In this document: positions 7,373-30,258 of the stretch, piece by piece
Numbering within the stretch: the stretch's first letter is position 1
How the letters are laid out: every line of letters starts with the position of its first letter
Origin: Fimbriosthenelais zetlandica
Taxonomy: Eukaryota
DNA length: 64,000 bases
Direction: 5' to 3'
Assembly (NCBI GenBank): GCA_977030845.1
Contig: OZ365110.1
Coordinates: forward strand, 35,216,001 to 35,280,000
Translations under genes and position numbers: made by a program
Notes under the pieces: generated by a model
The model's input: the letters and a program-made list of their open reading frames with translations, nothing else
Databases searched by the model: none
Told to the model about the DNA's origin: nothing

Positions 7373-7467
7373 CTGGTATACGTAGGGTTCTTTGCCGTGT
7401 TTTCAAATAATGATTAAAAGTATTTCGGGTTATTCCTTTCAGCAGAGGGTTACAAGATCGAAACAAA

Positions 7468-7683: not shown

Positions 7684-7939
7684 GTATGTGTCTCCATAAT
7701 TATGTCCAGCCTATTTGACAAAAAAGAAATTCACAAATTATAATTTTCAGTTGCCTGTTTCAAAACCATAGGCTAAAGCTTTGTTATGAAACAACCCCCA
7801 GCCTATCATATCTTACTATATATACGATAAGTGCAAGGGATAGCCATTACTTAATAGGTCTAGGCCTACTTGACTCCATAAGGGAGAGTCCGCGACAAAA
7901 TATCATAACTAACATCATACATGGTCATCGATTTTTCAG

Positions 7940-8011
7940 CAAGAGGCAGTCCGGATTGTAAGCTGTTTCGGTGAGGCAGAATCGCAAGATGTGGAAAAGG
8001 ACAAACATTGA
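7940..8011 (+). CDS. Akh: Gene C coding exon 2: QEAVRIVSCFGEAESQDVEKDKH*
   Basis: Acceptor atttttcAG at 7938-7939. Gives the same C-x24-C spacing as A and B. Stop TGA at 8009-8011. Confidence 0.9.
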   Translation, partial: QEAVRIVSCFGEAESQDVEKDKH

Positions 8012-8437
8012 AAGCTTCATTTGTATTCTTTATAGTAAGTATTCCACCACTTTTGTGACATTTGAGTTCCTTCCCGTCAGATCTAATGCTTATATAAATA
8101 ATTATTTTAAAGGTCTTAGCAAGATTGGCCCAGACAGTAGCCATTTCAACGCACGTAGCAATTGAAACAGTCCCCAAGTGCACTGGATAAAGACATTCGA
8201 TTTCATTCAGTAAATTGCAAACTGCAAATCATGCTGAGCCCTATTATCACCCACTTTGACTTTATACTACTGTTCGGCCTATAGACAAAAATTCTACGCT
8301 AACAGATGTAATCCTGTTTTAATTTCAGAAAATGTTTCAAGATTGTATTGCATAGATGAAATCTCATCAGTGATATCTGCAGATCGAATCTCTTCATTTC
8401 AATGACAGTCAAGCTTACGTCAGGGTACCGTGACGTC

Positions 8438-8443
8438 AATAAA
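8438..8443 (+). terminator. Candidate polyadenylation signal of gene C
   Basis: AATAAA overlapping a TGACGTCA palindrome; another AATAAA lies near 8565. Motif match only. Confidence 0.3.
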
Positions 8444-10695
8444 GCCATGTGAGAAAGACAAGTTTTATTTTTACGTGTTCACCAACTCAAAATGACGGAT
8501 GTGAATAGCGATATAGGCCTACCAAATTCTGCCAGAATTGTTATCAATGTTTATACTTGTAGAAATAAAGGTATAGTTTTATTAAAATGAATGCCAATTA
8601 TATTCATTGCAATTGCAGTACAATTGATAGTATAAGTCTACCTGACTGTCTATCTAAGCATTATGATAACATAGTACAGGTACTTAATTCTGTTAAGTAC
8701 TGTAACTCTGCTGATCAACGCGTATCTAGCACATGGCACTGCACTAGGGCGCCCCTAGCATGGAAAACAGACAACTTTGTAGATTTAGTGTGTGTTAGTC
8801 CTACAAAAATCCACTAGATGTCACCATTATGGCAGATCATCAACCATGGCTTGTATGCCCAACGAGTATGCCAAAGCACTGCATGTCGCCTTTATATATT
8901 TATCTTAACCCTCCGTTGAAAATAATGATATTATTTGAAAGAATCTGTAACATATATTTGCATATATTTTCGAGGATTACGTAAAGTGTTGTTTATAATG
9001 ACAAAAAAATAATGACATAATGTTAAAAAAAATAGTATCCTAACTACGAAGACAGTCATAATCACGATTAAACATAATAGATCCGGAGCTGGTAGGCTAC
9101 ACCATTTAAATCCAATCTTAACTGTTCTGGAATATGTCCATAACTTCCACACAGAATGTAATAAAGACCCTTCTAATAATCCGGGTAAAGACTAAAGAAA
9201 TAAAAATGTTCGAGAATAAAATATAGGAACAGCTTTGGAAAATGAAAGATCGATTTCTTCCCATGTGGTTTGAAAAGTGGTTGTGAGTATACAAAGATAA
9301 ATTACAGTCATATCATATATGTACTTTACAACATAGGGCACATTTCTCGATATAGCCGCTGATTGACTTTAATGTACAAGGACGGTTTTCTTTAGTTCCC
9401 AAGCGATAAACAGCATTAAATAACACCCTTAAGAAGGTTGTTTATACTGCTTGTGTCAACATTTGTGAAAGTATCCTATTTTGTGGCTTATTCTATCCGT
9501 CAAATATTCACCTCACATAATCCAAAGAGTTATAACTCTCCATGACAAAGTGAACATAGAAAATCAGATTGTGTAAACAATTTATTATTGCATTTATTAA
9601 GTAAAAATTTGTTTCCTGCTGTTTAGATATAGACTTTATTCTCTTCAATTGGAAACGAAATGAAAAAAGACATAATTTCCGCCGTGTTAGGAGGTATACC
9701 TTGTTATTCTAACATCCCATTGAGGGAGCGATGCAAATCAATATACTTTGGACTATATTATTATGTATAGGCCTATATGTGACTATGAACTTACCAGTAT
9801 AGGCCTAATCTTCTCGAGGATCATTAATTTTTTTACGTCGTTCGTAATAGCTACTGATCCTTTCCACATTTAGCTCACTTTTAAAACGCATCAAACAGTT
9901 CAACTAAATGTTGTTGGCCGTATAGTTTATTTTAAATCTTTGGTCTGTCACAATTAATAGGCTCTGTCCTGACAGTAGGATGTATCGTTAAATAAAATCA
10001 ACTATTTGGACTTAAAGCCTATTATAGGAAGGCAGACCGCTCGGGACGAGGTCAAACTTGGCCGGGTAACAAGCCGGGGCCGCCGGCGAGCCCCCGGGGG
10101 CTGCTCCCACCCAGGTCCTATATGTACAGTACGTCCCTGATGTGGTGGGTGGTGGGAGGAGTGTGGTGGATGCAATAAACTTAAACTTGACATGGCAAGG
10201 TCAGGTGAGATGTGTCACAACGTCCGACTGACCATACATAGGCTATACCATGCGAAATGTACAGATCCCCTATACTGCAGGCTATATAGCCTATAGTTCT
10301 ATGCATAGGCTTATTAACAAAGTTAAAGTAAACTCAATTTACAGGATTTTCGTTTTTTCTGTGTTATCAGGGCACTTTAAACCTGGAATTATATCATTAA
10401 ATGGCTAGCCTATCTTTTGTTCATACAAATAATTTCCTTCCTTCTAAAACATGTTTGACTCTTCCATAATGGTCCTAATGGTTAATAAGGTAAACCGCAA
10501 ATAAGACTTCAAAGCTTTCTCCATTTTCACGCTTTTAGATTTAATGAACCTTGTCCTGATATCTATACCACTCATTTTCAAAAGAAGTAAAGTTAACAAG
10601 CAATGTATATCCTACATGTACACGTACATCTTCGCAAAGAGCATCCTCTTCCTCCTTTCGGCATTGCAAAAGCCCAAGTGTTTATCAGTCACCAG

Positions 10696-10762
10696 GGGCC
10701 TGTTTCAGAACAACCATTAGCAATGCTAAGTCTATGGGACATTTTTACGCTGAAACAGACCC
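10696..10762. mobile_element. MITE family 1, best-preserved copy (67 bp, CAG target-site duplication)
   Basis: CAG-GGGCCTGTTTCA...TGAAACAGACCC-CAG: 12-bp TIRs with one mismatch and an identical 3-bp flank. Confidence 0.75.
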
Positions 10763-11339
10763 CAGAAAGCATATCGATAATATATGAAACATGTGATTTT
10801 CAATCCTGGGTCTATAAATATATTAGATAAACAATAAGCCTGTTTAGGATTGATGGCTGAAGGAAAAAGCCTATAGGACATTTTGACATTGCCGATTGAC
10901 ATTCCCCCAACACAAAATCGCGTGCAACCTCATGCAGTGCACCACTAAAAGATTGCGTTATTTTCACCTTAAACTTGCCATCAGCAGTGATTTCCTGCTA
11001 GCCAGATGGCTGTGTGGGCCCACTTTAAGTGTCCATCACCGTTTCCTAGTTGACCGATTACCCCGTCCTGTTTGCCTGATGCATCAAACCTGTATCGCCA
11101 CCCAGCGATCATAATCGACCTGGCAAATGGATTTATGAATTTCCGTAACATCAAAACTCTATAAAGGCTATCGATCGGGGCTAATATATCTCATCTTAAG
11201 CCATCAGGTTTGAGCTGCTTCTCTAAAAGCTTCTGGGGGCTTCATCATTTCATATCATAATCCGTTATAATAAATAGACACCACTTCCGGCTGTGAGGTC
11301 TCACAACGCTGATTCCGACAGCGCCAAAACAGCAGCGAA

Positions 11340-11360
11340 CAGCGCCCCACCTGGTGGCGC
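11340..11360. promoter_or_regulatory. Bidirectional CTCF-like motif
   Basis: CAGCGCCCCACCTGGTGGCGC matches CCACCAGGTGGCGC with one mismatch in each orientation. Motif only. Confidence 0.35.
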
Positions 11361-14131
11361 GTGGATGATTTATTCTCAACACGTCGGCCGCGCGTTCCTC
11401 AAGACGTCACAGTGGACATGACAAACACGTCAGGGTGGTCAAGCTCAGGATATTGGGCTGATGATGAAGTCGGTTGGGAAACGCATGCATGATCGGCCGA
11501 GCGCAATAAAGCCGCGTTAATTGCAAAGCAAAAGAGACTGAGTGAAAGGGAGAGTTCCTGCTTCACAAGAGGATAGGCTGACAAGTTGATGGCATCCAAT
11601 TAAGTGAAGCATTTTGGCACGCTGTGATAACACTAGGTTTATCGGAGGTGTTCAGATGAGAGATACTCATTAGAAGTTGGTTCGGTATCGATTGGTACAA
11701 AACACTGAGCAGCTTAAAGATGTCCAATCAATTTTGTTTACTTCTCCATCCCCCTCGATCTTGCATTTCCTGTGTCATTAAACCCCAATGCATTGTAATT
11801 GCGATATATGATATGCATTTCCTTATAATTTAGGCTACTTTTCTAAGGGGTTTTTAATATATCACAGAATAGTTAATTATTCGTTTTAAATAGACAGGTG
11901 CCATGCATAATTAATTCTGTATTAAAATTTGACTCAGTGGATCGGAGGCTCCCTCTGTAGGGTATAACAGTGCAACCCTGACCGATGATATGCCCTCTGA
12001 CAGGAACCTGATGGTATGTTTCAATGTTTAGATGAGCCTGATATGAATAAGATACCACCTCTATTTGTGAGCTGTCATGGAATGATTCATTAGAAAGGTT
12101 GGCTTATAAAAATCACGAGTCCAGTTATGTAGCGAAGATTACACCATGATGTGTGTGGTATTCACATGTTCTTTCTCCATGTTTCACCCATGTGAAACCT
12201 GATAAACCTATCACTCATCTCTCTCGCTGTTTCTGGCTGATCTAAACTACTTCCAGTTAGGTTTTAACGGCATTGTACTTCATATTTGATTATAAACGAC
12301 TTTTCTCCTCTCTGGGAGGTCATTTCAGAACCTGTTTGTTCTTTCTATGAAGCATTCCATCCAGATTCACTAATCCTTCACTTCCAATAAGGCAGGATGT
12401 GTTGTGGTGTAACTTTAAGCAAGTTCAAACTTAAGGTAGGACTCAAATGCTGCGACAGAGCTTGCAACACGACAGCGACCAAGGTGATGCAGGTGTTGCA
12501 ATGAGAACTGTAGGTCTACCAGTGGAGGACCACCTTAAGGCCTTCGACATTTCAAATAAATTATTAAAATAAATTATTTTGTTGTGACACAAGCAAAACC
12601 TTTGTCGCTGTAGTGTCACAAACACTGTCGCAGTAGTGGAGTCCCACCTTTAGTATAGAGAAGGGTATGTACACTGCAAACATAATTGGAAAGTTCTGAG
12701 AATATGTAGAAAGTTCTCCGGGTTCGTTTTAATTCACAGTACCCCTGCTGTTGCCAAAATCCAATGTCGATTAAAGTAACTCTCTCTCGTATATGAATAG
12801 GTCATAATTAATCCATTCATTTCCGACATGTGGCGCTTGCGATAACATTGGTCGCTATGGCAATATTGTGTGCCTGAATATCTCAGTGACAAGTTGATCC
12901 ACGTTGACAACTTACAGGACATTGTGAGCCATAATTGGTGCCTGATATTGGTCCGGATAAAGGCAGCCAGCTTCATTATGGTCGTAATAGATCCTCGCCT
13001 TTCAGAAATGGCCCCCAGATCTGCGACCAATAAAGAAGTTGGCTATCATATTGCACGGCCATGAGAGAGCCTGCAGAGTTGCATAGTTAGTCGCTCCATT
13101 GACAGTCACAAAGCTCCTTCAATATGACCTCCGAGGCGGTATTCCCCCCACACAGAGGCATTATTCTCACCCAAAATACCTCTTTCCTTATATTATAATT
13201 AAGATATCAGCTGACAAAGCGAGGGGATTGACCATATCGTCCTGGCCTTATTATGATGAGTTTGGCGCCTAACATCACCAATCGGGCTTGAAGAAGCCGA
13301 CTATTGACCGCCTTTTGGCGCCACAATGGCATCAGGGCAATGGGGAGATGAAATGAAAACAAGCTAACAATAACGCATCGATTTCAATTCACGGAGAATT
13401 GAGCCCACGTCGAGAACCTAGTCATTCCTTAAGATTACGGTATCTAAAATGAAAGGAATTTTCCTTCATTTTTTAAAGCTAGAATGTACCTTGATGTAAC
13501 CTGATAAGCAGAGTGATATGTCTTTAGGCAAAATAACACGATAATACATAGCTGATCTTTTTCCCCCAAATTATTATCTTGGGATGCATAATCGTCGCTT
13601 CAAGGCAAACTGACAAATCTTTGCTAGCGACAAATCAAGTAAATAGCGTTTAACATTAGCATCCATTACGATAAGTATAATTATTATAAGAATTTTGACA
13701 ATGTAAGCAATTCTCTGCACGTCTGATGAACGTGTATAGGGCCTACAGCATTAGTAAAGTTGTTATAAATGCGTATTGGTAAGCGATTATATAGTAATTT
13801 ACCTATAATCTGAATAATGTATTAAATATAACGACAAATTATATTAGTCATACATTACGTGTTTTAGAGCTAATATAATCCAGTGATTCTGCCACCTAAG
13901 TACCGTAAACCAACGAGAAGAGTTTTTTAGTATTTCCCATCAGAGTACACAAATACAGTGGGAAATGCATTATAGAGAATAACCCCTGTGACAACCTCAA
14001 ACTATCCACATTTAGCGTGATTCATTGTGCGTTTTGTCAGCCAATCCATACCTCCATTGGTCTGGTTTTGAGTAGAGAAGACAATTTCATCATTTCTGAT
14101 CCTCGGGCCATTGTCACTTGGCTGGCGGTAG

Positions 14132-14152
14132 GATCAAAGGCAAAGATCAAAG
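14132..14152 (+). promoter_or_regulatory. Tandem TCF/LEF-type sites
   Basis: GATCAAAG at 14132-14139 and 14145-14152. Confidence 0.3.
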
Positions 14153-15452
14153 TGTCCTGCTCCAGGTACAGTGCCCAGGTATGTGGATCTTTCATGCTCG
14201 TCTCATCAAAAGTTAGGTCACTCCCAGTGGAAGTCCCCAATCAAGTCTATATACCGCGTATACCTCAATTTCAACCCTAATCTAGAGGAAAATTATTTGT
14301 TTTCATCAATAAAAAAAATCGTATTTTTACAATATAAGTTTACTTAAGAAATATAGCTGATGGATACTTAAATGTTGTTTTATATGCCTTGATTGGTAAA
14401 TAATTATCCGGGCCTCACTTATGTGAAACGGTCCCAGTGCTGGCATGTTGGGATGTGTTGACATCTCAGTATTGACACTTCCTCAAAGCCAGATCCCCAT
14501 ATTTGTGAATCATTCGCTTGTACTGTGTACCTTTGTGACAGAAGCTACAAAATAGATCCCCAACCAAATCCCTGTCAAGTGTCAGGTGTGTTGACAATAT
14601 AGTTGTGAATCCATTGCTGCTTTTTATACGGCCACTGGGATGGGGTGGCACCGTCCCGAACTGCAGCCATGTATGGCCCCAAGTGACAAGGCCATTTAAT
14701 GGGAGATTTATTCCATAGGTTATAATGACATGCACCATTGTGTAAGATACCTGGCGGTAGGGGAGAGAGTCAGACCAAAGGCCGTACAGTAAAATCATAT
14801 ACATTTGTATTGAGGTGATGTTCAACATATTATAGGGATGACCACATCCAAAATGGTCCTCATCATCTTTAAACCTTTCGTATATACATGTAATTATAAA
14901 TTAGTATGACCCATATTGTATGCTCATGCAGAGATTATAACAATATTGTACTTGTTTAGACCTCAATTAAATTGAAAGTTAGTAAATAAAAAGACATAAT
15001 TGCCTGTGTATAGGCCTAAAGATTTAAAGTCATTGGAAATTTATGGTAGGGTTTCTTATTTTGATGATGGAAAAGGGCGCATATGGGTCTATTTATCTTA
15101 CATATTTATCAGCCGTATGTTGTAAAATTTCGTCTTACACCCGAAAATAATAAAAGGTGTGCTTTATTTTGGAGTATCTCGATCAGACTTTAACATCTCA
15201 TAATAACTCATTATAAAGGAAATATCCGTGAATACAGGTTATAAAACATTTGCTTCTCGTTTTACAATGACTGATATTTATCGTCCACATACATTAGGTA
15301 TTTATCTATTTATATTAGTTCATATACCGAACACTAAATGTCATTAACTCAACTGTACTGGTAAACACAATGGCTTCTCAACTCAATAAAAGCTCATGAA
15401 AACGTCACTGTTGCTTTATTCCTCACCAGAAGGGTCAGAAATATCATGTTCA

Positions 15453-15469
15453 AGGTCAATACAAGGTCA
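15453..15469 (+). promoter_or_regulatory. Perfect DR5 nuclear-receptor element (AGGTCA-N5-AGGTCA)
   Basis: AGGTCA ATACA AGGTCA, with further half-sites at 15432-15437 and 15483-15488. Confidence 0.4.
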
Positions 15470-18400
15470 ATCTAGCAAAGGTTGACCTTTGTAAAGGCCA
15501 CGTGCTGGGAAGGCGGGACAATGATAATCTGGCCGAGATACAGGCAGGAAATCAGGAGGCGGGGTCATTACCTTGTTTCCCTCATTATCGCTCGGTGATG
15601 CATTTGGCTCCGTTAAACCTTCCACGATAAGCTATTTGACCGTTTACATTACTACAAAGGCATATTTGGGTCGTTTAAATGGATTCCATGCAGTCTCCTT
15701 ACCTGGTTTCTGGAAAAGATTTCTTACTAAATATGGCGTCTTATATATTATTGTCGTGTTGGAATGGCATTGTCGCCTTCCTAAAAGGGGTCAAAAAGAA
15801 ATTTTGTTTCAAAAGTGGTAGTAAAGTTTTAAGTGGTTCATTACTTTTTTCATTCACTTCATTGAGGGGCGGGTTCAGTTAGACACACAAAAGAGACCAA
15901 GACAACTATAGTTTGACATCCATACAATCTTTATTAATGTCAGCAGCTTCTGATTGAGGGCATGTCACAAGGGTGAGTGAACAGGGGGATATCATCAGCT
16001 CGGTAATCGGAGATTAAGTGGAAACGTTGTCCACCCTTTTAAAGCGATCCGTGGCTTCAAAAACAATTTGTTTGCAATCGACAGATTGAATATTATTTGG
16101 GCCCCATGTTGGCGGTACTTTTAGATTGGTTTGGGAAATGACATATTCACTGTTTATCGGGAGATATAAATATTAGTAGCCCATAGACAATAATCAAGAT
16201 TTGTTTATAGATTTCCAATCTTGCAACAAATAAATTTTATGAAAATAATTATTACTGGAATAATCACAGAACACGAATCCACTGTATTGTAAAAAGTTAA
16301 TAATTTCATTTTCATTGCTCCTGTTTGTTTTTTATAATGTTTGGACAAATATAAACACAGCTAATCACTGTAATTTAACTGTGAATTAGAGCTACAGAAT
16401 GTACAGGATATCCGCTCATGTATACAGGTAGCGATTGATAATTATTATATGTCCTTTGCTTTGAGCAAAAGACCCTTTGTCACGGCATTAAATCAACCTT
16501 TTGATATCAACTATACATATCTGATTACAAGTGTCTGATAGGCTTTTTTCTGAACATGAAAGGAATGGTTGGGATTCAATACTGACAGTTTACAATGTAG
16601 TCACAATTCTTTAGGGGTCTTTTCTCTAAGTATACGGCTCCTATATATACGGCTCGCACACTTGTCTCCCTGCTCCATCATCGCCCTCTCATTCTTAGTG
16701 CCCGCCATCCTAGACTTGGGACTGACTCGGTCGCGCTCAGCTGCTTCTTAATTTTGAAAAGTTAATTACTCATTTAAGATAAATTGGTCGCCCGAGGGCC
16801 ATTCTTGTTTTGAATTGTAGTATGAGCTTACGGGTCTCCTTGGGGTCTGTCGGGTCAACTCTTGAAAGAGGAGGCAGCTTGAAAGCTAGTACGATACATA
16901 GAGTTATAAACGGCTATAAGATCCACATGACAGTCATGGAATTCGCCGATGAAATATGTGTAATCCCCTCACATCCGCCAGTCCAATGATGAATGAGAAA
17001 GAATTTGGATCTTTTCTTGAAGGAATAAGCCATGTGCGTTGAAAAAGCAGGACAAGTTTTATTTAGCTGCATTGGCAGAAATCTTCATAAATATTTAGAT
17101 CTCATTTATTATGTAAGCCTACATTACATTAGATTACATATTGTTAGGCCTTATGTTATTTTACATAAAGGATGGTAAACCACTGTTTAGTGGGTCTATA
17201 ACATTAGACTGTGTTTACTGGTTTAATTTAGAACTCACTCTAAATTAGGAAAGATGCGCATCATGCGATCAAATGTGTTGAAGCATATGATTGTGTACAT
17301 ATAAGTTATAATATATATCATTACAATTAACAGGTTTGATTTTTGTATGGACATAGGTGAATACCGCAATTGAATGTAGAAATTAATATGAAAGATGAAG
17401 CTATAACTGGGGAATTTAAAGTGCCACTTAACTGGAATTAGCATGCTGCTGATGTGTCACTGGCAAAACATCTCAGTGCAACCATTACCATTTTTTTGAG
17501 ACAGAAAAGCTGCAACACTGTGTATCTCACTAAAATGAATTAACAGAGTAATTGAACTCGATAGTGAAATCCGGAAATCTAACGGGAAGTTGGTGGGGAG
17601 TGAGCAGTATTTTGTCGTTATGACGTCACTTCACAGAATTGAAGTGAGTGAAATTATAAGTACAATGTAATGTAATGTACATGGATTTGTAATGTACAGA
17701 TGGATTTAGCATGGCAAAACGTAGAACTCGGGATATAATTATAATTGACTTAAGTTTATTACCTCCTATATTCCTTATACATGTACATTTCTGTGGGGTA
17801 CATGTATACACGCTACTTAAGTAATGAATTACATAATCATGAGTTGGGAGATAACCGTCCACAATGTATTTATTGTAAGCTGAATTAAGGACCCAAATAT
17901 TAGTTCAATAGGGGGCCAAACAGTTCATTACGAATAGAATAATTTGACCTTCAACCACCAGCTTCAGAACAAGACAGATACATTACTTGATGGGCACACA
18001 AGTGGGATGATTTAGTTGAAAAGGGAGGAGAAAGTTATTAGCTTCCTGCCGAGCAAGGCTTACCACTAATCGACCCCCTGCAGATGACACTGTGCACGGC
18101 AAAAGGCCGCAACGTTCGGGGGGCCTGTCGCAGGAAAAGAAGGCGCTACATTTTTAGTTTGTTTACTGGATGTAGCACATCTTTTCCCTGAAACAGACCC
18201 CGGGTCAGCTTAGCTGTGATAGAGTGACGAGTGAACAGCAGGTGTTTTTTGTGGTCAGTGGGCCAATTGTGATGCTACTTGAATAGTCCTCAACTATCAC
18301 CATTCAATGGCCTTCCCTTTGTGAAAACCGTAGTCCCTTCACGGGGGGCCTTCCGTGCAACCCTTGTTAGCAACCCATCCCAACAGACTTTGGAATTTTT

Positions 18401-20934: not shown

Positions 20935-21000
20935 TGGGGATGGGGATGGGGATGGGGATGGGGATGGGGATGGGGATGGGGATGGGGATGGGGATGGGGA
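20935..21000 (+). repeat. (TGGGGA)11 perfect hexanucleotide microsatellite
   Basis: Read directly from the sequence. Confidence 0.95.
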
Positions 21001-24000
21001 TGGGGGAAGGTGGAGGAGGTTGTGGGGCTCCATGGCCTGGGTGTCACCACGCCGGTATGCTCTAAGAGCCCGCCACACGGAGTCGGGTCTCAGCCGCCAG
21101 CCTAGCGCCTGTCTCCGGCCCACTCATGCAACACTAATAGGCATCACATGTGTTGTATACTCCCAACAAAATGTCCCACACAACAGTCACAACAGTCAAT
21201 GGAAAGATTAGAAAAATGCTAGTAAAACACACCATTAAACCTGAAAACTTATGTCAATGATTCTGGAAATAACGTATGCCATTTGTTCCAATAGATTTAG
21301 GTCCACTCCTTAGTTCATGTCTAATGGTTATTTTTATTCTTCATTGATTGAATGGATGTACTATTCATATAACATAAAAGTCATTATTTTCGCCTTTCTA
21401 AAGGAGACTGTTGGGTGGTCTCTTCCCGAAACATTATAAAGGGGATATCGAAGTTTTTTCTATAGGCCTTCTACGTATGAAAGCCCTTATAAAACTATTC
21501 ATTCAAATGAATTGTTATCATATACATTCAGGTCTATAGCTACAGTTTTAGAGATAACAATTCTCACTTTCCTAAATACATGTAGTCTCGTAACATATAT
21601 CCATCCTAAAATATCCTTTCACTGTAGACACAAGTTCTCTAAATTAACCTTAAACGAGATCGATTGCTCGGTAAATGGTCTCAAAATGAACACATAAATA
21701 ACGCCATATAGGAGGTGGATATGTTCATTCTGCCACCCATGCATCTCTCTGCATCAATTTACATGCATGCTTTAAAAGAAAAAGCCCAGTAATTTCCCAA
21801 TAACCACGCGCCTTTATCTATAACCGGGTCCCGACCTGGTGCGCTCACTTCGCATGTATTTTCATTGATAATAAAAGCCAATAAAATGGTCGCGGAAGGA
21901 GCAATTGCGCGACGCGGGCCCTTTTTCTGCCGCGGCGTCCTTGCCATATCCACAGAGCTTTATAGCTAAATTGATGAGACCGTATCAAAGCACATGCCAT
22001 GATTGGAGGGACAATTCCAGCCTAGCCACTTTGGTCTGTCCTTGGGTTAATCTCTAGGTAATCTTTGTTTTTATCGCCAATCACCGCCACAAAAAGCCTC
22101 ACGCGAGGCGCCCATCAAGAGATCATTTTCTCCATTATCCTCCGACCACCGCCGCCAGGCCCAACTCCTCCAAACGACACACTGATTCATCAAGATCCCT
22201 GCCACGGCGAGCCGCGCCCCTACCGGCCAAAGATGTGTGTAAATGGACGTGGATGATATAATTTATCTAGTACGCCCACTTCTGATTAGACTGACCATTA
22301 AAAGAGACGGTGCCAGTGGAAGGCATCAAATGTAGTGGTCATGAAACATCATCAGGCCCTCTCTGATGGTTTAATTAGGCGTCTTTGTTTTAATTAGCCA
22401 TGGCTTTATCAATGTGCAGGCGACACGTCAGTCTGAGACAAGTCATCGTTAATACAATGTTGGCCTTGTTATGGGCCTCATTGGCTGCATTAGAGATTAA
22501 TGTACTTCTGATTTACTGGTCGACGCTTCGGGGGCCACTTGACAAGTGGGGGGAAACAGGCCGCAAACGGGCATTAATGCCCTTGAACGACTGGGCCGAG
22601 GCTGAAACGCATGCAACAGAAAGTGTTTCGCTCTGCCACACACTGGGGGCAGCAGTGTAGCAGGAGGGATCTAGATTTTAGCCTGAGGCACTGGAGGTAG
22701 TGCGATGCTACAAGCGTGGTGATAATTACCACTGATTTTCATCATTACCCGTTTCCATTCTTCAACAGATCCACGGGCTAAAAGGGTATATCATATATCT
22801 CTTACATAATATAGCTTTTCATATGAATTTAAACCCCAAAGATGTAACTATGCTTTGATATCGTGTTATGGCATACTTAATATCAGTGAAAGGGATCATT
22901 CTGGTTGGGTTTTCTTTACTTTTTTGTCTTTGGTTATATTTTGTCAAGTAAAAATAAACACACAATCTCTGCCTCCTGTGGGATGACTAAATGTAATGCA
23001 TGTATCTCATGCATTACATATTTCACCCCCGATGGAAAATATGTAATGCATGATACAACATTCCCTAATTGTTTGATGCGATACACCTTGCTTGGTATTA
23101 TAGAGAAGGATTTTGGAGTGGCTTCTTTGAGGCTATACAATGTGGCTTCATTCAAACAGCTTGGTTCTGCGTAGAATAATAAGACCCGGCTCCTAACGTC
23201 TCCCCACCCTGGTCCATCACCCCAGACACCCTTCACCTCCACAAACAGCCTCTCGCCATCACCTCACCACCCATCCTCTTACGCCTTGTTGCCATTCCCG
23301 ATCATTTCCTGAAGCCCCCTCGCCCCTGGAGCGCCCCATGAATGCAGTTTTTACGGGCGCCACAATGAGATTATGATGTATTCCTAATTCACCCTGATCG
23401 CATTAATATCCCCGGGCCGTGGACGTTATGTCCACTGGGGTGTGCCGCGTCCACTTAATGTATGATCCTTAGCTTTCGTTCACAACCCCCAGCCCATCCA
23501 TCACCAACCAACCGGATTGGGAGGCCGAGCGCATATCGAGGCAATTGTTCCACTTAGCCCCTCACTACCATCTATTGTATGGTAAAATGTGCTACAGCAT
23601 ATTCCCCATATGATAATCAATGTGAGGATTTCATACAATACATTGGTATTTACGTATGTGCTTGTATAAATACGTTCACCTTTTGGCAGGGGTGTTCTTT
23701 ATTTCCTTTATAGTTTGGATCATCCGGGCTGTCTTGAACATATTTATGCGCCTGACCCTCGGGCCCTCACAGGCCGGACCATAATTGTATAATGTGCCCA
23801 AGGCACGCGCTACACAAGGCGCCCCTAATCCCTTCCTTGGCGACCGGGCACGGCAGAATTAAATAATATTTATACATCATCAATTTCGTAATAAAGCAGG
23901 CATGGAAAGGCAAATGGAGGCCGGACGAAGGCCGGAGTGGGCGCGTGCACCGATCAATCATAGGGTTAAAAAGCCCGCGGAGGTCGAGCCAGTTGGCAAA

Positions 24001-26810
24001 ATGGCCGCAGGCAGGGGAACAACTTACAAACTCTTTGTTTCTAGCACATCCTCAAAATACATATCATATAGAAGCCAAGCTGTATAGAGAGACATGGAAC
24101 CATAATGCATGACATGCAGTGGTTCCTGTAAATATTCAACAATAACCTGCATAATTGAGCATTGTCATTTTAATGAAAACAATGTTTGCAAATCATAAAC
24201 AGTACAAAAAGCAATCAATCTGGCAAGATTTATCGTTAATTGAGTGGTGATTGCCATGTGTTATCCATTATGTTTAAGTGCTACATTGTTCTGGTAAAAT
24301 CACCATATCAGGATTCAGCCCCCGCCCAACATTCATCATAGACTTTATGACCTCAACTCAGGTTACACAAAATAGGTTTTTACATCGAGGAACAAATGGA
24401 GTTTTTCTAAATTGACTTGTTCATTACATTAAACACATCAGATTATTCATTCATTGTCATTAGAATAATAATGACATTACCTGATTAAAACATGACTCGT
24501 TCTGAAAGATTGAATAGAATCATTTAATTCTTCAATCATTAATCAAGTAATGAATGTTTCTTAAACCGGAAGTATGGACGCATTTTGTAATAAATATCAA
24601 ATTGAGTTCAATGTCAATTCAAAATGACATAATGAAATGAGTCTATTATTAAAGAGGAATTCCGAAGATATCTTTGCTTCTCAAAGGGAACAGCAAAACC
24701 AGGGGCCGATTAATTCATAACCCAGATGCCCTTGACCATTGGCTTTAAATAATGGCCCTGGAGACAACAGTTTTTCTCCTTAACTCGGTAATTCAACCTC
24801 CCCACCCCACTGTCCCTACTGATTTGCATTTAAGGCAAATGGGTGAGATATTGAGTGATTTAAATGTAGGGGGTTGGTAGTTAAACAGCTTATAACTCCC
24901 CTTCACACCCTAACTATCAACCATCCCAACTAAGTAGCCCTACCTTTAAAGATGACGACGTTGCTTCACGTGTCGCTGTTTATTTATATTCACATTAACG
25001 ATCCGTTATGACATTTGCCTGGTCCTTGACGTCAGTTCTCATGCCATTGCCAGACCACACACATTGAAAACTTTGCCCATTTTCAAACCGGATCAATATA
25101 ATTGCGGTCTAACTGCGCGTTTTACCCACTAATGGGTGCTAAATTTCCCCTGGACCGCCGTGGTGTGGCGCCGCAGTAGCCTAGGGTTCCAAATCATCCG
25201 CTTCCCCCGATCTATGTTTATCGACAAAGAGCCCAGCAGGAATTTCATTTGAATAATGTAGGCACCTGCCAGGCCATATAGCCCACCAGGGGGAGGGACA
25301 TGATTTCTCCATGATGCAATAGATTATATATTTTAGTGATACCTGTCAAGCCTAATGATGCCCTAATGTGGCATAACCTATTAGGACATGAAATGTTGGC
25401 CTCGGTAATGCACTCACCATTCAAATGTGACGGTTAAACGAGCCCCACAAGTGCAACCTTTCAATAACCCATATAGGAAAAACTAGGAGTGAATAAAATG
25501 TTTCTAAATAATGCAATGACAGTTATATAATAATTCATCTGGGATTTTTTTTTCCAACTTGCATTGTTGCATTGAAGACAAATGTGTTGAGGTATAGATT
25601 AAATTTATAGTTTTTTCTCTCTGTATTTAATTTTCTAAAGTGCTGTAAAGTGCTGTGTGGAATCCATTTATATATTCATCGGGGAGTGTAATGGCCATGC
25701 GTGGCTTTCAATACGTAATTGTCATGCAAACTGTGATAGACTACAATGGCTAGTGCTCATACTGTGACAATTTCATCTGTAATCAACCGCCAATGATGGT
25801 ATTTAACACATAACCAGACCAGCATTGGAAACGCCAAGCCATCTTGATCTAGAGAGACATGTGATTCAGAAAGATGCTTATAACCTGTGTTGCTGGAGAT
25901 GCCTTCTTCAAACGTTCATTCCCATACTACTTACGAGGTGAAATGGCTTCACCGACACACTGTTCATTTGAAATGACGTGTAGGTCATTTACTTATGGGT
26001 ACCAGGCGTGTTTTTTAAGTGGGCATTATATTTTTTATTCACTTTCTGGTACATTCTAAAATTGTGGATACGTGTGCAGCATTTTATTTCAGACTCTACT
26101 CACAGATGTCCATGAAGTTTGGCATTTGTCCAGTACGCTTGAATTAATGTATCATCCCCACATGCATTTGCGGAGTTTAAAGGGCCGTTATATATACATT
26201 CAATCCTATCATGTTCTTGGCACTTTTCCCTTAACCCTTGCCTCGCGGGGTCAGTGCCATCATCACCAGCCCACCCACCTTCCTATTCTATGCGCTTATT
26301 TACCAAAATTACCCTCCACAATCAATAGCCTGCCTGCCATGCTTGCCTTCAGCCCACACGTTCGCTTCACGGCGACGACCAAGTCTGCAAATCTGTCCTG
26401 ACGTGTTTCTCCATACAGAATGGCCAAAGTAGCCATAATGACCCATAGGAGGCGTTTACCGTTTAAAATGCCCCCTGTTTGATGTGCCGCTCCCAGAGTC
26501 CTCACGCGGCGAGGTGTGAAACGAAAGCTGACAGTCGCCCGATCGACGATAATGAAACAAAAACATAGAGGGGATTACTCCAATGGAGACAGCAATCGGA
26601 CGCGTTGATCTAAATAGTAGCCTCTTATGGGCCCGGGTTTTCATTTTCCCAAGCATCCATGCAGTTTTGTCCATTCAGTCATGTATGTGTTAAATTCAAG
26701 ACGACCGAAGTAATCAAGCCCCATTAAAAGATGTGCTATAAATGAGATCCATGCAGAGCCTGTTTCACAATAAATATGCGCTACATTAGCCAATGGAATG
26801 TCTATAACAG

Positions 26811-26905
26811 GGACCTGTTTCAGAACAAGAATTTAGCAATACTAAGTCTATGGGACATTTTAACCCTTTCTGAGACCCTCTGACCGCAAAAGGGTTAAAG
26901 GGTCC
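26811..26905. mobile_element. MITE family 1 copy with its right part replaced by a short TTAA-flanked inverted-repeat element
   Basis: CAG-GGACCTGTTTCAG...gggacattt[TTAACCCTTT...AAAGGGTTAA]agggtcc-CAG. Confidence 0.55.
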
Positions 26906-29105
26906 CAGAAGTAGCCAGATATATATATATAGGATAATGCATTAAAAACAGGATCCTTTTTTGAAATGGGACGTCTGAAAGGAGAATGTATAGGCCCCAA
27001 AAAGCATTTCAAAAAGCAGACGACCAATTCGCGAACGTGTTAAAGGGTCGAGGGAACATTGAGGGATCAAGAAGGAAAACAAAACGAATCTTGGCGTCAA
27101 AGCCCTCAAACTCCGCCGAAGCACAGACGATGCTCTGTCGGATGTTTGCGATGAGATTTTCTCGGGAAATTGCTAGATGGAAGGGGACGATAGGGTGACG
27201 TTATGTGTCCGCCATTGGCGGCCATGTTAGGAGTCAGTGTGTGGATTACGTGAGGCGTTCTGTATCCCTCCGCGCCCAAAGAGTCCGGCCGGGCGTGCCT
27301 GATTCGGGTAAATTGACTCATTTCCAGTCGATTATTTGAATGCGGTGTGTCAGCGGCCGCACATTAGCGCGTTTGAAGCGGCCGGATCTCTAACCAATTA
27401 CCAGAAATGACTGGTGGACACTGTGGGCGAGATTGTGTGTGTATTATGGCGCGAGAGAGTGGCATTGTGGGTGGTTTACAGGGGCGGCCAGGCTGGGCAG
27501 GCGCTCCGTTCTATATTGTTCTGCCAAGCAAACAAACCCGCTCATTGGTGCCAAGATATTGACTAGAATGACCACGAAAACAGAGATTATAAAAGGCTGT
27601 GCTTTATCACCCACGCAAAAGCTACCAATAATAATGCATAGAACGCATGGCGATATGAAAGAATATCGATTCCCATTGGGGCTGCCACCTATGCATGGAA
27701 GAAATTACATTTTTTCTCGGACCAATGTTTCTAAATGGCACCTTTTTAAGCCGTGTAAAATGTTAGGGTGAACATGGATGAAAGCTTTACACATGCGTGT
27801 ATAGGGGCGAGCGGCCACATTGACATCTGTAAAATTATAGAGTGCTGTTTTCTGACCTGGGACAATTCACACAAAAGTTCTCTTTATCGCGCCTCGCGAA
27901 AAGAGTCCAGACAATGACCGGGTCCTCGGAAGCCATTTTTCATTTGCTAATTACACATTTGACTTTGACTGTCAGATGAAATTGAACCTAACCCCCTACT
28001 GAGGGGGACACCATCTTCTGAGGGAAGAAGGTATTAAATTATGCACGCACACTCAACTGCTTGAACGCCCAGCCGTCATATGAACATGCAATTATAGGCC
28101 GAGAAATCCCATCCAGCAGACGGGTGAAGAACTTCTTAAGAATGTTGAATGATTTGTTATAAACATATGGTATCCATAATACGGGCTAGTCATGGCAGTC
28201 GATATACATGACTGGAAATAGAGTCCTTGTCTCGACATTTTCCTCGGTTATTTACACTAGTGAGTGAAAAATATTACAAAAAGTACTTGACCTGGTTTTG
28301 ATATGACTGATTTATTTTACAGCAATGTTAAATTATAGAAACAAGAGGTTCTATCCTCACCACAGAGCATAAACGAACCAATATTCATTTATCCCCTATA
28401 CTTCATGGAGTACATTATTGTATCCAACATATTGCACACATATCTCTGATACACTTTACATAACATAGTTTATTTGATAAACTTAGAGACTGCAACGAGG
28501 TTGAAGTCATTTTTATACTATTATTATAGCTGCATGGATTCGCAAACACCACTGATACACGATACCGTTTACACACTATATTGTATAATATACAGGACTA
28601 TTATAACTTTTTAAGTACATAGACGATTTTCTCATACAAAAACAATCCTGTGGATTCGATACACGATCTAATCGGCAAACATTGATATAGTATGTATTCT
28701 ATAGGATTATTTACAATGAACCAAAGGAAACTTGATGTTAATAACTGAGCTATTTTGTACGTACGCCTATAACTGATATTAAGTTACACTGTTGGGGAGG
28801 TGGACATTGTAGGAGAAAGCCAAGAGGTAACATGTAAGTATAAAGTATTATAGACACAGTGATGGGGGTTTACCCACCAGGGAGACTGGGCTGGAGACAG
28901 GAATATTGCAGTCCCAATCATTTAGCGATACTTTTCAGCAGACCGATTACGACTAAAGGGCGTCAGTAACGCCCTATTATCGCTCACGCAGCGCCTGCGT
29001 TTGGACGGCCGATTCGATTCGCTTTATCTTCGTAATACCTGTACCCTATAGCGTCCATATAGAAACTGGATTTATATTATAATTTTTCCCATCTTATATG
29101 GCCAA

Positions 29106-29111
29106 TTTATT
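29106..29111 (-). terminator. Candidate proximal polyadenylation signal of Emx
   Basis: AATAAA on the minus strand about 640 nt after the stop. Motif match only. Confidence 0.3.
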
Positions 29112-29745
29112 TGAGTCCAGTGGTCCAACAAATGTTTGTTGAAGAGGTATTTAGCATGGCCTAAATATTATAGCAATGAATGAAGAACGGGGTTATAATA
29201 GGCCTACCCTACCTTTTCCCTCTTACTAATGCTACCCCCTCCCAATATTGTACCTTATTCTCGGATATTAATACTTAAACTGGAAAGACGTGCGTGACGT
29301 AGCATGACGCAAAAACATACGATGTCCTCTCGAGTCTACTCTCGAGCCCGATGCAGAAGTTCATTAGAGTCTCAAGATTACAAAATAGGCCTAGCCATAT
29401 AGGATAGCAACACATATGGTTATAGTTATAGCATTTCGTCAGAAATTTATATAATTTAATAGTATAGAACGGCTACCACAATAATTAATGCTAGGATTGT
29501 CCTATAATGCTGAAGGTAACTCCTTAATTTAGGGGACTTCTTGAACATTTTCCTATTGAGTACCTGTACATTTTAACTCATACCTTTTACACAGTTTTAA
29601 TTGTGTTTATATAAAGTATCTGATACACATAATATATGAACAATGATTTGTTAAAGACATATTGCATCATGGATTTGCTTTGACTAACATTTGGAAACAA
29701 CAATCGCAAGTTTATAGATTCACCATAATGTACATGTTTACATAA

Positions 29746-30258
29746 TCATACTACTTGAACTTGGCTCGTTTCGGTCCGCCATCTTTCCACGTGGTGCGCC
29801 GTTTTGGCGGTAGAGGGCGATGGCGATCGCGATGGCCGACTTTGTTCTATATGGTGGTGACTTTGACCTTGAAATTGAACATGGCCTTGACTACTGCTAC
29901 TGTGACCTTGACTACTGTGACCTTGACCTACATGTTGATGGTCGAGGAGGTGTTTCTGGTGTTGGAGTGATTCCATGGCCAAACTATTCCTCATCAAGTT
30001 CACCTCCTCGTCCGTGTTTGTCACACAGTCTATTTCCTCGTCTTCGTCATCTATGAGTTCCATTTCTAGCTCCTCCTCTTCCTCCTCAGCATTGGAGGAC
30101 ATGTCTAAAGGTTTGTCCTCACCGTCAGACCTGACAGAGCCGCCATCTGGTGAGCCGGGATCTTTACTATGTCCACTGCCATCTCCTCTCTGGTTCTCCG
30201 CTTCTTCAGCTTTCATCCGCTTGTATTTGGTACGTCGGTTCTGGAACCATACTTTAAC
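29746..30258 (-). CDS. Emx: Emx homeobox gene, coding exon 3 (homeodomain helix 3 VKVWFQNRRTKYKR, acidic and His/Ser-rich C-terminus)
   Basis: Acceptor gtatttttcAG at 30260-30259, phase 0. VKVWFQNRRTKYKR continues exon 2. Contains the Emx-type HHVERWR motif. Stop TGA at 29748-29746. Confidence 0.95.
   Translation of the reverse strand, partial: VKVWFQNRRTKYKRMKAEEAENQRGDGSGHSKDPGSPDGGSVRSDGEDKPLDMSSNAEEEEEELEMELIDDEDEEIDCVTNTDEEVNLMRNSLAMESLQHQKHLLDHQHVGQGHSSQGHSSSSQGHVQFQGQSHHHIEQSRPSRSPSPSTAKTAHHVERWRTETSQVQVV

What the first reader, a model, noticed from the sequence alone, without database searches (positions are those of the whole stretch)
8012..29745. Tight linkage of an AKH/GnRH-type cluster to Emx may be ancient synteny
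Seen: the cluster lies about 21 kb downstream of Emx, tail-to-tail for A-C, with no recognisable gene between them. Known (from memory, to verify): vertebrate GnRH genes map to the paralogon that also holds the NK-linked homeobox genes; EMX2 is at human 10q26, the region syntenic with teleost gnrh3, and EMX1 is at 2p13. Emx2 is expressed in the nasal/olfactory epithelium where GnRH1 neurons arise. Inference: Emx-GnRH/AKH linkage could date to the bilaterian ancestor and might reflect shared enhancers (a genomic regulatory block).
Basis: partly seen in the sequence, partly recalled or inferred. Interest (0 to 1): 0.7.

Follow-up and report, generated by a model that had tools for sequence, protein, structure and literature searches.

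The report
Emx next to AKH hormone genes
In this worm genome a cluster of AKH/GnRH-type hormone genes lies 21.7 kb from the Emx homeobox gene. Only the chromosome-scale linkage looks ancient, and it was largely expected; the gap itself is mostly conserved non-coding DNA on the Emx side.

Summary
Position 8012 follows the stop codon of AKH-like gene C, and 29745 precedes the stop codon of a three-exon Emx gene on the minus strand. The two genes lie tail to tail, and I found no gene in the 21,734 bp between them.

Contig C10 (57 Mb) carries:
- all six AKH-type genes found in this genome;
- the only vasotocin gene;
- the only COE/EBF gene;
- about 16 NK-linked homeobox genes, including Msx, Lbx, Tlx, NK4, NK3, NK1, Hmx, Vax, Noto, Nk6, Hhex and two Emx genes.

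This content mirrors human 10q23-26 and the published GnRH and NKL paralogons. The GnRH/corazonin-type gene is on another chromosome.

The tight adjacency is not shown to be old:
- The two genes encoding the pan-annelid peptide pQFSFSLPGKWGNamide lie 10 and 17 Mb away from Emx.
- One relative keeps Emx and AKH genes on what appears to be the same 726-kb contig.
- Another annelid has no AKH gene within 20 kb downstream of Emx.
- The AKH loci of Dimorphilus and Lamellibrachia have no homeobox within 10 kb on either side.

The Emx-proximal 8.7 kb is packed with conserved non-coding blocks, whereas the AKH genes have none. Shared enhancers are therefore unsupported.

Earlier notes of this scan described the AKH cluster itself.

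The parts
1..850 (-). AKH-like gene D. Exon 1 lies at about 714-850. Exon 2 starts at about 120 and runs off the left edge of the window.
   Evidence: Six-frame motif scan and tblastn. Coordinates are approximate.
3633..4189 (+). AKH-like gene A, exons 3633-3854 and 4118-4189. It encodes pQFSFSLPGSWGQT-amide plus a second peptide that is not amidated.
   Evidence: Sequence reading; A-type orthologues P0006 and P0011.
5219..5694 (+). AKH-like gene B, exons 5219-5404 and 5620-5694. It has no recognisable hormone.
   Evidence: Sequence reading; weak tblastn similarity to C in the associated-peptide region.
6700..8011 (+). AKH-like gene C. Probable 5' UTR exon at about 6700-6771, then CDS 7468-7683 and 7940-8011. 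It encodes pQFSFSLPGNWGN-amide.
   Evidence: Sequence reading. Orthologue P0001 is 94% identical. Only the coding exons are conserved in L044 and L040.
8012..29745 (.). The interval between the stop codons of AKH gene C and of Emx, 21,734 bp, with no detectable gene. It is unique sequence apart from small MITE-like repeats.
12430..12653 (.). A palindromic MITE-like repeat of about 220 bp, present in many copies across the genome.
   Evidence: Own-genome DNA search: dozens of scored copies at 78-84% identity, matching on both strands.
21033..28565 (.). Array of nine conserved non-coding blocks downstream of Emx: 21033-21154, 21776-22772, 23270-23589, 23770-24493, 24925-25807, 26211-26591, 27012-27588, 27831-28360 and 28525-28565. 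They are most likely Emx cis-regulatory elements.
   Evidence: Collinear blastn blocks to relative L041 at 72-93% identity, covering about 61% of the stretch. Four-fold sites of Emx exon 3 are only 54% identical. No 3-base periodicity, and gap lengths are not multiples of three.
29746..30258 (-). Emx exon 3: third helix of the homeodomain plus the C-terminal tail and stop codon.
   Evidence: Sequence reading; Pfam Homeodomain positions 44-57; codon-periodic divergence from L041.
30541..39030 (.). Conserved non-coding blocks in Emx intron 2.
   Evidence: Ten collinear blocks at 72-86% identity to L041, with no codon periodicity.
46553..46722 (-). Emx exon 2: homeodomain residues 1-44 and the upstream arm.
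   Evidence: Sequence reading; Pfam Homeodomain E=1.2e-6; 71% DNA identity to the Emx gene of a distant annelid.
56935..57487 (-). Emx exon 1: N-terminal GFTIDSLM motif and YPWLM motif.
   Evidence: Sequence reading; orthologous ORFs P0002 (61% identity) and P0004 (36%).

Best explanation
The 21.7-kb interval is mainly the 3' regulatory landscape of the Emx gene. It is a gene-free stretch, and its Emx-proximal third or more is filled with non-coding elements under purifying selection, most likely Emx enhancers or insulators.

The AKH-type cluster (D, A, B, C) sits at the outer edge of this landscape. It carries no conserved non-coding DNA of its own.

The two gene families share a chromosome because that chromosome descends from the ancestral bilaterian linkage group that became the vertebrate GnRH and NKL ('MetaHox') paralogons. 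In this genome it holds AKH-type genes, vasotocin, COE/EBF and the NK-linked homeoboxes.

The tight adjacency is a later event, restricted to part of the annelids. AKH-type genes duplicated along this chromosome, giving three loci, and one copy expanded in tandem beside Emx.

Shown here: the anatomy, the chromosome-scale co-location, the conserved non-coding blocks, and the lack of AKH-Emx linkage within the flanks reached in three other annelids. Inferred: that the conserved blocks regulate Emx, that the cluster arose by intrachromosomal duplication, and that the chromosome-scale linkage is ancestral.
For: Anatomy.

All AKH-type exon-1 matches in the genome are on C10:
- the cluster at 35.22 Mb;
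- single genes at 18.36 and 45.81 Mb. These encode pQFSFSLPGKWGNamide, identical to Capitella GnRH-2 and Platynereis proto-AKH-1 (PMC5024129).

Other markers on C10:
- the only vasotocin-neurophysin gene, at 43.43 Mb;
- the only COE/EBF gene, at 31.2 Mb;
- one of two DOCK_N genes;
- homeoboxes read as Hhex, Lbx, Msx, Nk6, two Emx, Tlx, Vax, NK4, NK3, Noto, Hmx and two NK1.
C10 is 12.8% of the genome. Three independent markers landing there by chance has a probability of about 0.002.

Literature: the GnRH paralogon comprises human chromosomes 8, 20, 10 and 5, with EBF1-4 and NKX2-3/5/6 as members, and GnRH is linked to vasotocin. EMX2 is at 10q26.11 and the NKL paralogon is 2p/8p, 4p, 5q, 10q.

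Conserved non-coding blocks: 72-93% identity over about 61% of 21033-28565, against 54% identity at four-fold sites. They show no codon periodicity.

No conserved non-coding DNA was found around gene C or across the cluster in two equally distant relatives.

The A/C duplication and their order are conserved in another species (L040). Emx exons and AKH genes appear to share a 726-kb contig in a further species.
Against: - No expression, accessibility or contact data exist, so the target gene of the conserved blocks is inferred by analogy with other developmental homeobox genes.
- The AKH-proximal 13 kb (8012-21033) could not be compared with any relative, apart from about 1.1 kb next to gene C.
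- The negative cross-species tests reach only 10-20 kb. The AKH genes of Dimorphilus and Lamellibrachia may be orthologues of the dispersed copies, not of the cluster.
- Two-peptide AKH precursors are widespread in annelids, so the cluster type is not obviously young. The gene tree is unresolved.
- Homeobox family names rest on my reading of homeodomain signatures, not on a named reference set.
- The amphioxus peptide gene that lies next to vasotocin acts on a corazonin-type receptor (PMC3969558). This complicates a simple match of AKH to GnRH by position.
Confidence: 0.62

Rival explanations
1. One reading: Emx and a GnRH/AKH-type gene have been immediate neighbours since the bilaterian ancestor. 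They are held together because they share enhancers, or because enhancers of one gene lie within the other (a genomic regulatory block).
For: - Tail-to-tail adjacency with no gene between.
- A dense array of conserved non-coding blocks in the gap.
- Linkage apparently kept on one contig in a relative whose Emx exon 1 is 61% identical.
- Human EMX2 and the 'ghost' GnRH3 region both lie on 10q.
Against: - Only one of three AKH loci is near Emx. The genes with the pan-annelid peptide lie 10-17 Mb away.
- There is no AKH gene within 10 kb upstream or 20.5 kb downstream of the compact 7.3-kb Emx gene of another annelid, although the HMM used recovers AKH genes of distant annelids.
- There is no homeobox within 10 kb either side of AKH in Dimorphilus or Lamellibrachia.
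- No conserved non-coding DNA lies around or inside the AKH cluster.
- Neither GnRH-paralogon paper read here (PMC3969558, PMC3265131) mentions Emx, and no paper in the searched library holds EMX2, GnRH and 'paralogon' together.
Confidence: 0.08
2. The AKH cluster is a true bystander inside the Emx regulatory block, but only within this annelid clade. Emx enhancers lie beyond or among the AKH genes, so rearrangements that separate the two are selected against in the family or order, though not across phyla.
For: - The cluster's order and orientation (A then C) are conserved in species 3.
- AKH and Emx appear to lie on one contig in species 2.
- The conserved blocks extend at least 8.7 kb towards the cluster, up to the end of the available contig.
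Against: The 10 kb upstream of the A-like gene, the A-C spacer and about 1 kb downstream of C show no non-coding conservation at the same evolutionary distance. Nothing is known about the region left of gene D.
Confidence: 0.18
3. The juxtaposition has no evolutionary meaning at any scale. AKH genes are on the NK/Emx chromosome by chance, and the resemblance to vertebrate paralogons is coincidental.
For: - One chromosome is 12.8% of the genome, so a single family landing there is not rare.
- The GnRH/corazonin-type gene is on a different chromosome.
- Only a handful of markers were tested.
Against: Vasotocin, COE/EBF and AKH were chosen in advance from published paralogon lists, and all three map to C10 together with NK4 and NK3. 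The joint chance is about 0.002. AKH-vasotocin linkage was also reported in a limpet.
Confidence: 0.07
4. The interval is not empty. It holds an unannotated gene (small-exon coding gene, lncRNA or miRNA host), so Emx and the AKH cluster are not true neighbours, and some conserved blocks are exons.
For: - No RNA data could be obtained.
- Some conserved blocks are up to 1 kb long at about 82% identity, which is long for enhancers.
- ORF-based tests miss short exons.
Against: - No block shows codon periodicity or gaps in multiples of three, unlike Emx exon 3.
- No Rfam family matches.
- No ORF exceeds the chance expectation, and there are no credible Pfam hits.
Confidence: 0.1

Closest known systems
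Vertebrate GnRH paralogon (human 8p, 20p, 10q 'ghost GnRH3', 5q 'ghost GnRH4'; Kim et al., Tostivint, Roch et al. 2014, PMC3969558 and PMC3265131)
   Same: One chromosome combines a GnRH-superfamily gene, vasotocin/oxytocin-type, EBF/COE, a DOCK gene and NK4/NK3-type homeoboxes. AKH-vasotocin linkage was already reported in the limpet Lottia.
   Different: - Here the GnRH-superfamily members are annelid 'proto-AKH' genes in three loci.
- Distances are megabases, except for the Emx-adjacent cluster.
- Emx was not listed among paralogon members in the papers read.
- The GnRH/corazonin-type gene lies on another chromosome.
NKL / 'MetaHox' homeobox linkage group (human 2p/8p, 4p, 5q, 10q; Holland, Booth and Bruford 2007, PMC2211742)
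   Same: Emx, Vax, Noto, Hmx, NK1, Nk6, Tlx, Lbx, NK4, NK3, Msx and Hhex are all on one chromosome, as on human 10q23-26 and its paralogues.
   Different: The genes are dispersed over about 50 Mb rather than tightly clustered. There is a tandem Emx pair, and neuropeptide genes are interspersed.
Genomic regulatory blocks around developmental transcription-factor genes (CNE arrays with bystander genes; named from my own knowledge)
   Same: A gene-free flank of a developmental homeobox gene and its large intron are dense in conserved non-coding elements.
   Different: The candidate bystander (the AKH cluster) shows no interdigitated conserved elements in the parts that could be compared. Its synteny with Emx is not seen in more distant annelids.
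Annelid proto-AKH / 'GnRH-2' precursors (Veenstra 2011; Li et al. 2016, PMC5024129; Urechis AKH QUP52003.1)
   Same: - A signal peptide is followed directly by pQFSFSLPG-W-G.
- A Gly plus dibasic processing site follows.
- The associated peptide contains cysteine.
- A phase-0 intron lies in the associated peptide.
   Different: - The cluster genes differ from the invariant pQFSFSLPGKWGNamide at one to three positions.
- They carry a second peptide that is not amidated.
- One copy (B) has lost the hormone.

Membership tests
Emx (empty spiracles) homeobox family | A 60-residue ANTP/NKL-class homeodomain | tested here: met
   Pfam PF00046 matches exon 2 (E=1.2e-6, profile positions 14-45) and exon 3 (positions 44-57). 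PDB homeodomain chains match at up to E=1.9e-13.
Emx (empty spiracles) homeobox family | Emx-diagnostic homeodomain residues ([27 protein letters not shown]...SLTETQVKVWFQNRRTK) | not testable with these tools
   The sequence reads this way, and by my memory it matches human EMX2 at about 53 of 60 positions. No named Emx reference could be retrieved: PDB holds none, the Atlas names only 'Homeodomain', and a literature string search found nothing.
Emx (empty spiracles) homeobox family | N-terminal GF(T/S)I(D/E)S(L/I) motif and a YPW(L) motif upstream of the homeodomain | tested here: met
   GFTIDSLM and LYPWLM are present in exon 1. The same motifs occur in the orthologue of another annelid (L037), and GFSIESI occurs in the tandem paralogue Emx-b. 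That these motifs define Emx is from my own knowledge.
Emx (empty spiracles) homeobox family | Intron splitting the homeodomain between residues 44 and 45 | tested here: met
   Exon 2 ends ...TETQ followed by a gtgagg donor. Exon 3 starts VKVWFQNRR after a ttttcag acceptor.
AKH/GnRH-type (annelid proto-AKH) precursor | A signal peptide followed directly by Gln, an FS pair, Trp near the C-terminus, then Gly plus a dibasic site | tested here: met
   Genes A and C. An HMM built from them finds 38 relatives, including Urechis 'AKH' QUP52003.1 and the Dimorphilus and Lamellibrachia proteins. The paralogues on C10 encode exactly the published Capitella/Platynereis peptide.
AKH/GnRH-type (annelid proto-AKH) precursor | The peptide activates an AKH/GnRH-type receptor | not testable with these tools
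   This needs receptor pharmacology.
Genomic regulatory block joining Emx and the AKH cluster | An array of conserved non-coding elements around the developmental target gene | tested here: met
   There are 19 collinear non-coding blocks at 72-93% identity in the intron and the 3' flank, against 54% identity at four-fold sites. None shows codon periodicity.
Genomic regulatory block joining Emx and the AKH cluster | Conserved elements extend into or beyond the bystander gene(s) | tested here: not met
   Only AKH coding exons align in L044 (from 2.1 kb upstream to 1.1 kb downstream of gene C) and in L040 (from 10 kb upstream of the A-like gene to 1 kb past the C-like gene). The stretch 9.2-21 kb and the region left of gene D remain untested.
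Genomic regulatory block joining Emx and the AKH cluster | Target-bystander synteny conserved over deep phylogeny | tested here: not met
   Apparently kept in one relative (same 726-kb contig). No AKH gene lies within 10 kb upstream or 20.5 kb downstream of Emx in another annelid. No homeobox lies within 10 kb either side of AKH in Dimorphilus or Lamellibrachia. The reach of these tests is limited.
GnRH / NKL ancestral linkage group | A GnRH-type gene, vasotocin, EBF/COE and NK4/NK3-type homeoboxes on one chromosome | tested here: met
   All are on C10. One of two DOCK_N genes is also there. A genome-wide orthologue test was not possible.

The most novel reading that the evidence does not exclude
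Position could help settle the GnRH/AKH/corazonin orthology question. In this annelid every proto-AKH gene lies on the chromosome that matches the vertebrate GnRH paralogon (vasotocin, EBF, NK4/NK3, Emx, Vax, Hmx). The 'GnRH-like'/corazonin-type gene (pQAYHFSKGWGA-amide) lies on a different chromosome, one that carries an 11-gene homeobox array that is probably Hox.

If this split holds across phyla, annelid and mollusc AKH-type genes are the positional orthologues of vertebrate GnRH. In addition, the Emx-flanking AKH cluster might be a clade-wide bystander locked into the Emx regulatory block.
Probability: 0.2. Interest if true: 0.55.

Novelty: new member of a known kind. Interest (0 to 1): 0.33.

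Why it matters
The case shows how a striking local adjacency can be separated from real deep synteny. The old feature is the chromosome: an annelid counterpart of human 10q23-26 and its paralogues, carrying hormone genes (AKH/GnRH-type and vasotocin) together with NK-linked homeoboxes.

This gives a cheap positional argument that annelid proto-AKH genes, rather than the corazonin-like gene, correspond to vertebrate GnRH. It also supplies a defined set of Emx-flanking conserved elements for enhancer tests. It does not reveal a new kind of system.

Tried and rejected
- Rfam and tRNA scans of the window found nothing.
- Pfam on the ten longest ORFs of the interval gave only a low-complexity match (TrAA12 on a Gly-Asp repeat) and a sub-threshold RGM_C match. 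I rejected both.
- A search for public sequencing runs listed none.
- Own-genome searches with the CCAP and stanniocalcin Pfam models found nothing. These are uninformative because the controls were also silent.
- I tested whether the Dimorphilus AKH neighbours (a PWI/RRM gene and a sulfotransferase) flank any AKH locus here. The PWI genes are on other chromosomes and the sulfotransferases are a large family, so there is no microsynteny signal.
- Walking downstream of the C-like gene in species 3 failed because the ORF is not on record.
- Species 2 (ERZ26222911) gave no DNA or coordinates. Only neighbour lists were available, and they do not overlap. The Emx-AKH distance there is therefore more than about 17-20 kb and less than 726 kb.
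- An AKH gene tree was mostly unresolved beyond the A-type and C-type orthologue groups.
- PDB and ESM Atlas searches could not tell Emx from other homeodomains.
- Paper searches found nothing for EMX2 + GnRH + paralogon, for an Emx homeodomain string, or for the fly corazonin map position.
- The supplement of Roch et al. is not held.
- A search for copies of the conserved blocks near the second Emx gene found none.

Full report
**What is in the window**

The window is G000:C10:35,216,001-35,280,000 of a 447-Mb assembly; C10 is 57.1 Mb. Earlier notes of this scan call the organism an annelid. This fits the relatives I found: Urechis, Lamellibrachia and Dimorphilus proteins in the same peptide family.

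On the plus strand lie three two-exon neuropeptide precursor genes:
- A: 3633-3854 and 4118-4189;
- B: 5219-5404 and 5620-5694;
- C: 7468-7683 and 7940-8011, with a probable 5' UTR exon near 6700-6771.

A fourth gene, D, is on the minus strand at the left edge.

A and C begin with a signal peptide followed directly by pQFSFSLPG(S/N)WG. A Gly plus dibasic site, a second peptide that is not amidated, and a cysteine-containing tail follow.

On the minus strand is a three-exon homeobox gene:
- exon 1: 57487-56935;
- exon 2: 46722-46553;
- exon 3: 30258-29746.

Pfam Homeodomain matches exons 2 and 3. The homeodomain is split between residues 44 and 45. Its sequence, together with the GFTIDSLM and YPWLM motifs of exon 1, is what I know as the Emx signature. 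No named Emx reference could be fetched to test this formally.

**The observation**

The finding's coordinates are exact. Position 8012 is the first base after the stop codon of C, and 29745 is the base before the stop codon of Emx. The interval is 21,734 bp and the genes lie tail to tail.

I found no gene in the interval:
- The longest stop-free frame is 150 aa. Shuffles of the interval give a mean of 136 and a maximum of 190.
- Ten ORFs gave no credible Pfam hit.
- There is no tRNA and no Rfam family.
- The interval is unique within 204 kb, apart from a small repeat and a MITE-like element.
- RNA evidence was unobtainable; no run was listed.

**The chromosome**

A six-frame homeodomain scan of the genome, with my reading of the C10 hits, places these genes on C10:

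| Gene | Position (Mb) |
|---|---|
| Hhex | 5.4 |
| Lbx | 7.7 |
| Msx | 8.7 |
| Nk6 | 25.8 |
| Emx-a (this window) | 35.26 |
| Emx-b | 35.33 |
| Tlx | 38.6 |
| Vax | 50.0 |
| NK4 | 51.46 |
| NK3 | 51.48 |
| Noto | 52.9 |
| Hmx | 54.2 |
| NK1 (two genes) | 54.3, 54.4 |

Emx-b is a second Emx gene on the same strand; its 3' end lies about 49 kb upstream of the Emx-a start. C10 is therefore the NK-linked homeobox chromosome.

Other markers:
- The only neurophysin match in the genome is a vasotocin gene encoding CFVRNCPPG-amide, on C10 at 43.43 Mb.
- The only COE/EBF gene is on C10 at 31.2 Mb.
- One of two DOCK_N genes is on C10.
- A protein search with AKH exon 1 finds five places in the genome, all on C10: the cluster, plus single genes at 18.36 and 45.81 Mb.
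- Both single genes encode pQFSFSLPGKWGNamide. Li et al. 2016 report this peptide as identical in Capitella ('GnRH-2') and Platynereis ('proto-AKH-1') (PMC5024129).
- A pattern search for the lophotrochozoan GnRH/corazonin-type core found one gene, encoding pQAYHFSKGWGA-amide. It is on C13, which also carries an 11-gene same-strand homeobox array that I take to be Hox (not verified).

**Comparison with the literature**

- Roch et al. 2014 place the human GnRH genes and their 'ghosts' on chromosomes 8, 20, 10 and 5. They also report GnRH-vasotocin-NPS linkage in amphioxus and AKH-vasotocin linkage in a limpet (PMC3969558).
- The Front Neurosci 2012 review, citing Kim et al. 2011, lists EBF1-4, PPP2R2, DOCK1/2/5, NKX2-3/5/6 and PTPRA/E as paralogon families (PMC3265131).
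- Holland et al. 2007 give EMX2 at 10q26.11 and EMX1 at 2p13.2. They define the NKL paralogon as 2p/8p, 4p, 5q and 10q. They place HHEX, NKX2-3, LBX1, TLX1, VAX1, EMX2, NKX1-2, HMX2/3 and NKX6-2 on 10q23-26, and NKX2-6 and NKX3-1 at 8p21.2 (PMC2211742).

C10 thus matches this vertebrate content closely. C10 is 12.8% of the genome, so the chance that AKH, vasotocin and COE all land on the Emx chromosome is about 0.002. I conclude that chromosome-scale linkage of GnRH/AKH-type genes with NK-linked homeoboxes, Emx included, is probably ancestral. This extends known paralogon and linkage-group results. The specific pair Emx-GnRH was not mentioned in the papers I could search.

**Is the tight adjacency old?**

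Only one of the three AKH loci is near Emx, and it is not one of the two that encode the invariant annelid peptide.

A profile search of 1.8 billion proteins found 38 relatives. These let me reach other genomes:

1. A close relative (Logan runs ERR14368249 and ERR14368245). Emx exon 3 and 10 kb downstream are collinear with the window as far as position 21033, where the contig ends.
2. ENA ERZ26222911. Emx exon 1 (61% identity), Emx exon 3, an A/C-type AKH gene and a D-type AKH gene all sit on a contig of 726,029 bp. No DNA or coordinates were served. The neighbour lists do not overlap, so the genes are more than about 17-20 kb apart. That they share one contig is inferred from the identical sample, contig length and label.
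3. ENA ERZ25767047. A-like and C-like genes lie in the same order and orientation. Emx was not reached.
4. ENA ERZ24900295. This annelid's Emx shares the N- and C-termini of Emx-a but spans only 7.3 kb. No AKH gene lies within 10 kb upstream or 20.5 kb downstream. The test used an HMM that recovers the Dimorphilus and Lamellibrachia genes at E=9e-13 and 3e-9.
5. Lamellibrachia satsuma, AKH KAI0242089.1. EF-hand genes lie downstream, and no homeobox lies within 10 kb on either side.
6. Dimorphilus gyrociliatus, AKH CAD5121804.1, in a very compact genome. The neighbours are a sulfotransferase, a PWI/RRM gene and other peptide precursors. No homeobox lies within 10 kb on either side.

The adjacency therefore looks conserved within a group of fairly close relatives and absent where I could look further out. 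These negative tests are short-range and cannot exclude linkage at 20-100 kb.

**What the interval is**

Between this genome and the close relative, four-fold degenerate sites of Emx exon 3 are only 54% identical (n=48) and third codon positions 59%. The introns and flanks of AKH gene C do not align at all.

Nevertheless, nine collinear blocks between 21033 and 28565 are 72-93% identical and cover about 61% of that stretch. Ten more lie in Emx intron 2, between 30541 and 39030. None shows three-base periodicity of mismatches, and gap lengths are not multiples of three. Emx exon 3 does show periodicity, with 23/16/64 mismatches by codon position.

These are conserved non-coding elements, as expected around a developmental homeobox gene. 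By contrast, only coding exons are conserved from 2.1 kb upstream to 1.1 kb downstream of gene C. The same holds across the A-C region and the 10 kb upstream of A in a second relative at a similar distance.

The simplest reading is that the gap belongs to the Emx regulatory landscape and the AKH cluster lies at or beyond its edge. Nothing indicates shared enhancers. The stretch 9.2-21 kb and the region left of gene D could not be compared, so a clade-limited 'bystander' arrangement remains possible.

**Verdict**

There is ancient linkage at the scale of the chromosome or paralogon, which was largely predictable from published work.
- There is no evidence that the 21-kb adjacency or a joint regulatory block is ancient.
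- Novelty is modest: a new instance of a known kind of conserved linkage, plus a usable positional argument on GnRH/AKH/corazonin orthology.

Noticed in passing
G000:C10 about 35,322,700-35,339,600 (loci L032-L033; window coordinates about 106.7-123.6 kb, outside the window): A second Emx gene (Emx-b) lies on the same strand as Emx-a. Its homeodomain exon is nearly identical, and exon 1 carries GFSIESI. Its 3' end is about 49 kb upstream of the Emx-a start, so the two form a tandem Emx pair.
   Followed up: partly
G000:C13:5,588,982-5,589,008 (locus L036): A single GnRH/corazonin-type precursor: signal peptide followed by QAYHFSKGWGAGKR. It lies on a different chromosome from all AKH-type genes. 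The same chromosome carries an 11-gene same-strand homeobox array at 13.6-14.5 Mb, which is probably Hox.
   Followed up: partly
G000:C10:43,432,989-43,436,201 (locus L019): The only vasotocin-neurophysin gene (CFVRNCPPGGKR plus neurophysin). It lies 8 Mb from the AKH cluster and 2.4 Mb from the AKH gene at 45.81 Mb.
   Followed up: partly
G000:C10:45,807,866 (L020) and C10:18,357,089 (L021): Two dispersed single-peptide AKH genes encode pQFSFSLPGKWGNamide, the peptide published for Capitella and Platynereis. Each has its own orthologue in other species (P0026, P0007).
   Followed up: partly
L043:5075-5359 (minus), Dimorphilus gyrociliatus CAJFCJ010000015.1: An unannotated ORF with a signal peptide followed by QLTQTLGWGSAGSPGKR and a Cys-containing tail that ends at a likely splice donor. 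It lies 5 kb from the AKH gene, head to head with it. It may be a divergent GnRH/AKH-superfamily paralogue.
   Followed up: no
L043:14171-15910 (plus), Dimorphilus: The gene next to AKH encodes many short W-amide-type peptides (RGWGKR, SWGKR, AMGWGKR). Its C-terminal Cys-containing domain gives a marginal match to the AKH profile (E=0.017), hinting at common ancestry with AKH precursors.
   Followed up: no
window 3744-3790 and 7576-7620; proteins P0001, P0006, P0011: The second peptide of the cluster genes (xFxFALPG(K/R)WGNVKR) lacks an amidation glycine. It is nevertheless conserved in the A-type and C-type orthologues of three other species.
   Followed up: partly
window 12430-12653: A palindromic MITE-like element of about 220 bp. 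Dozens of scored copies (78-84% identity) occur on many chromosomes, and the first look found 3124 candidates.
   Followed up: no
window 20890-21010: A (GAC/GGT)n microsatellite produces a Gly-Asp repeat ORF. That ORF gave the only Pfam 'hit' in the interval, and it is spurious.
   Followed up: yes
G000:C10 about 35,178,500-35,180,040 (L024:2488-4038, minus): A 517-codon open frame about 36 kb left of the window has no Pfam match. It may be the first non-AKH gene on that side.
   Followed up: no
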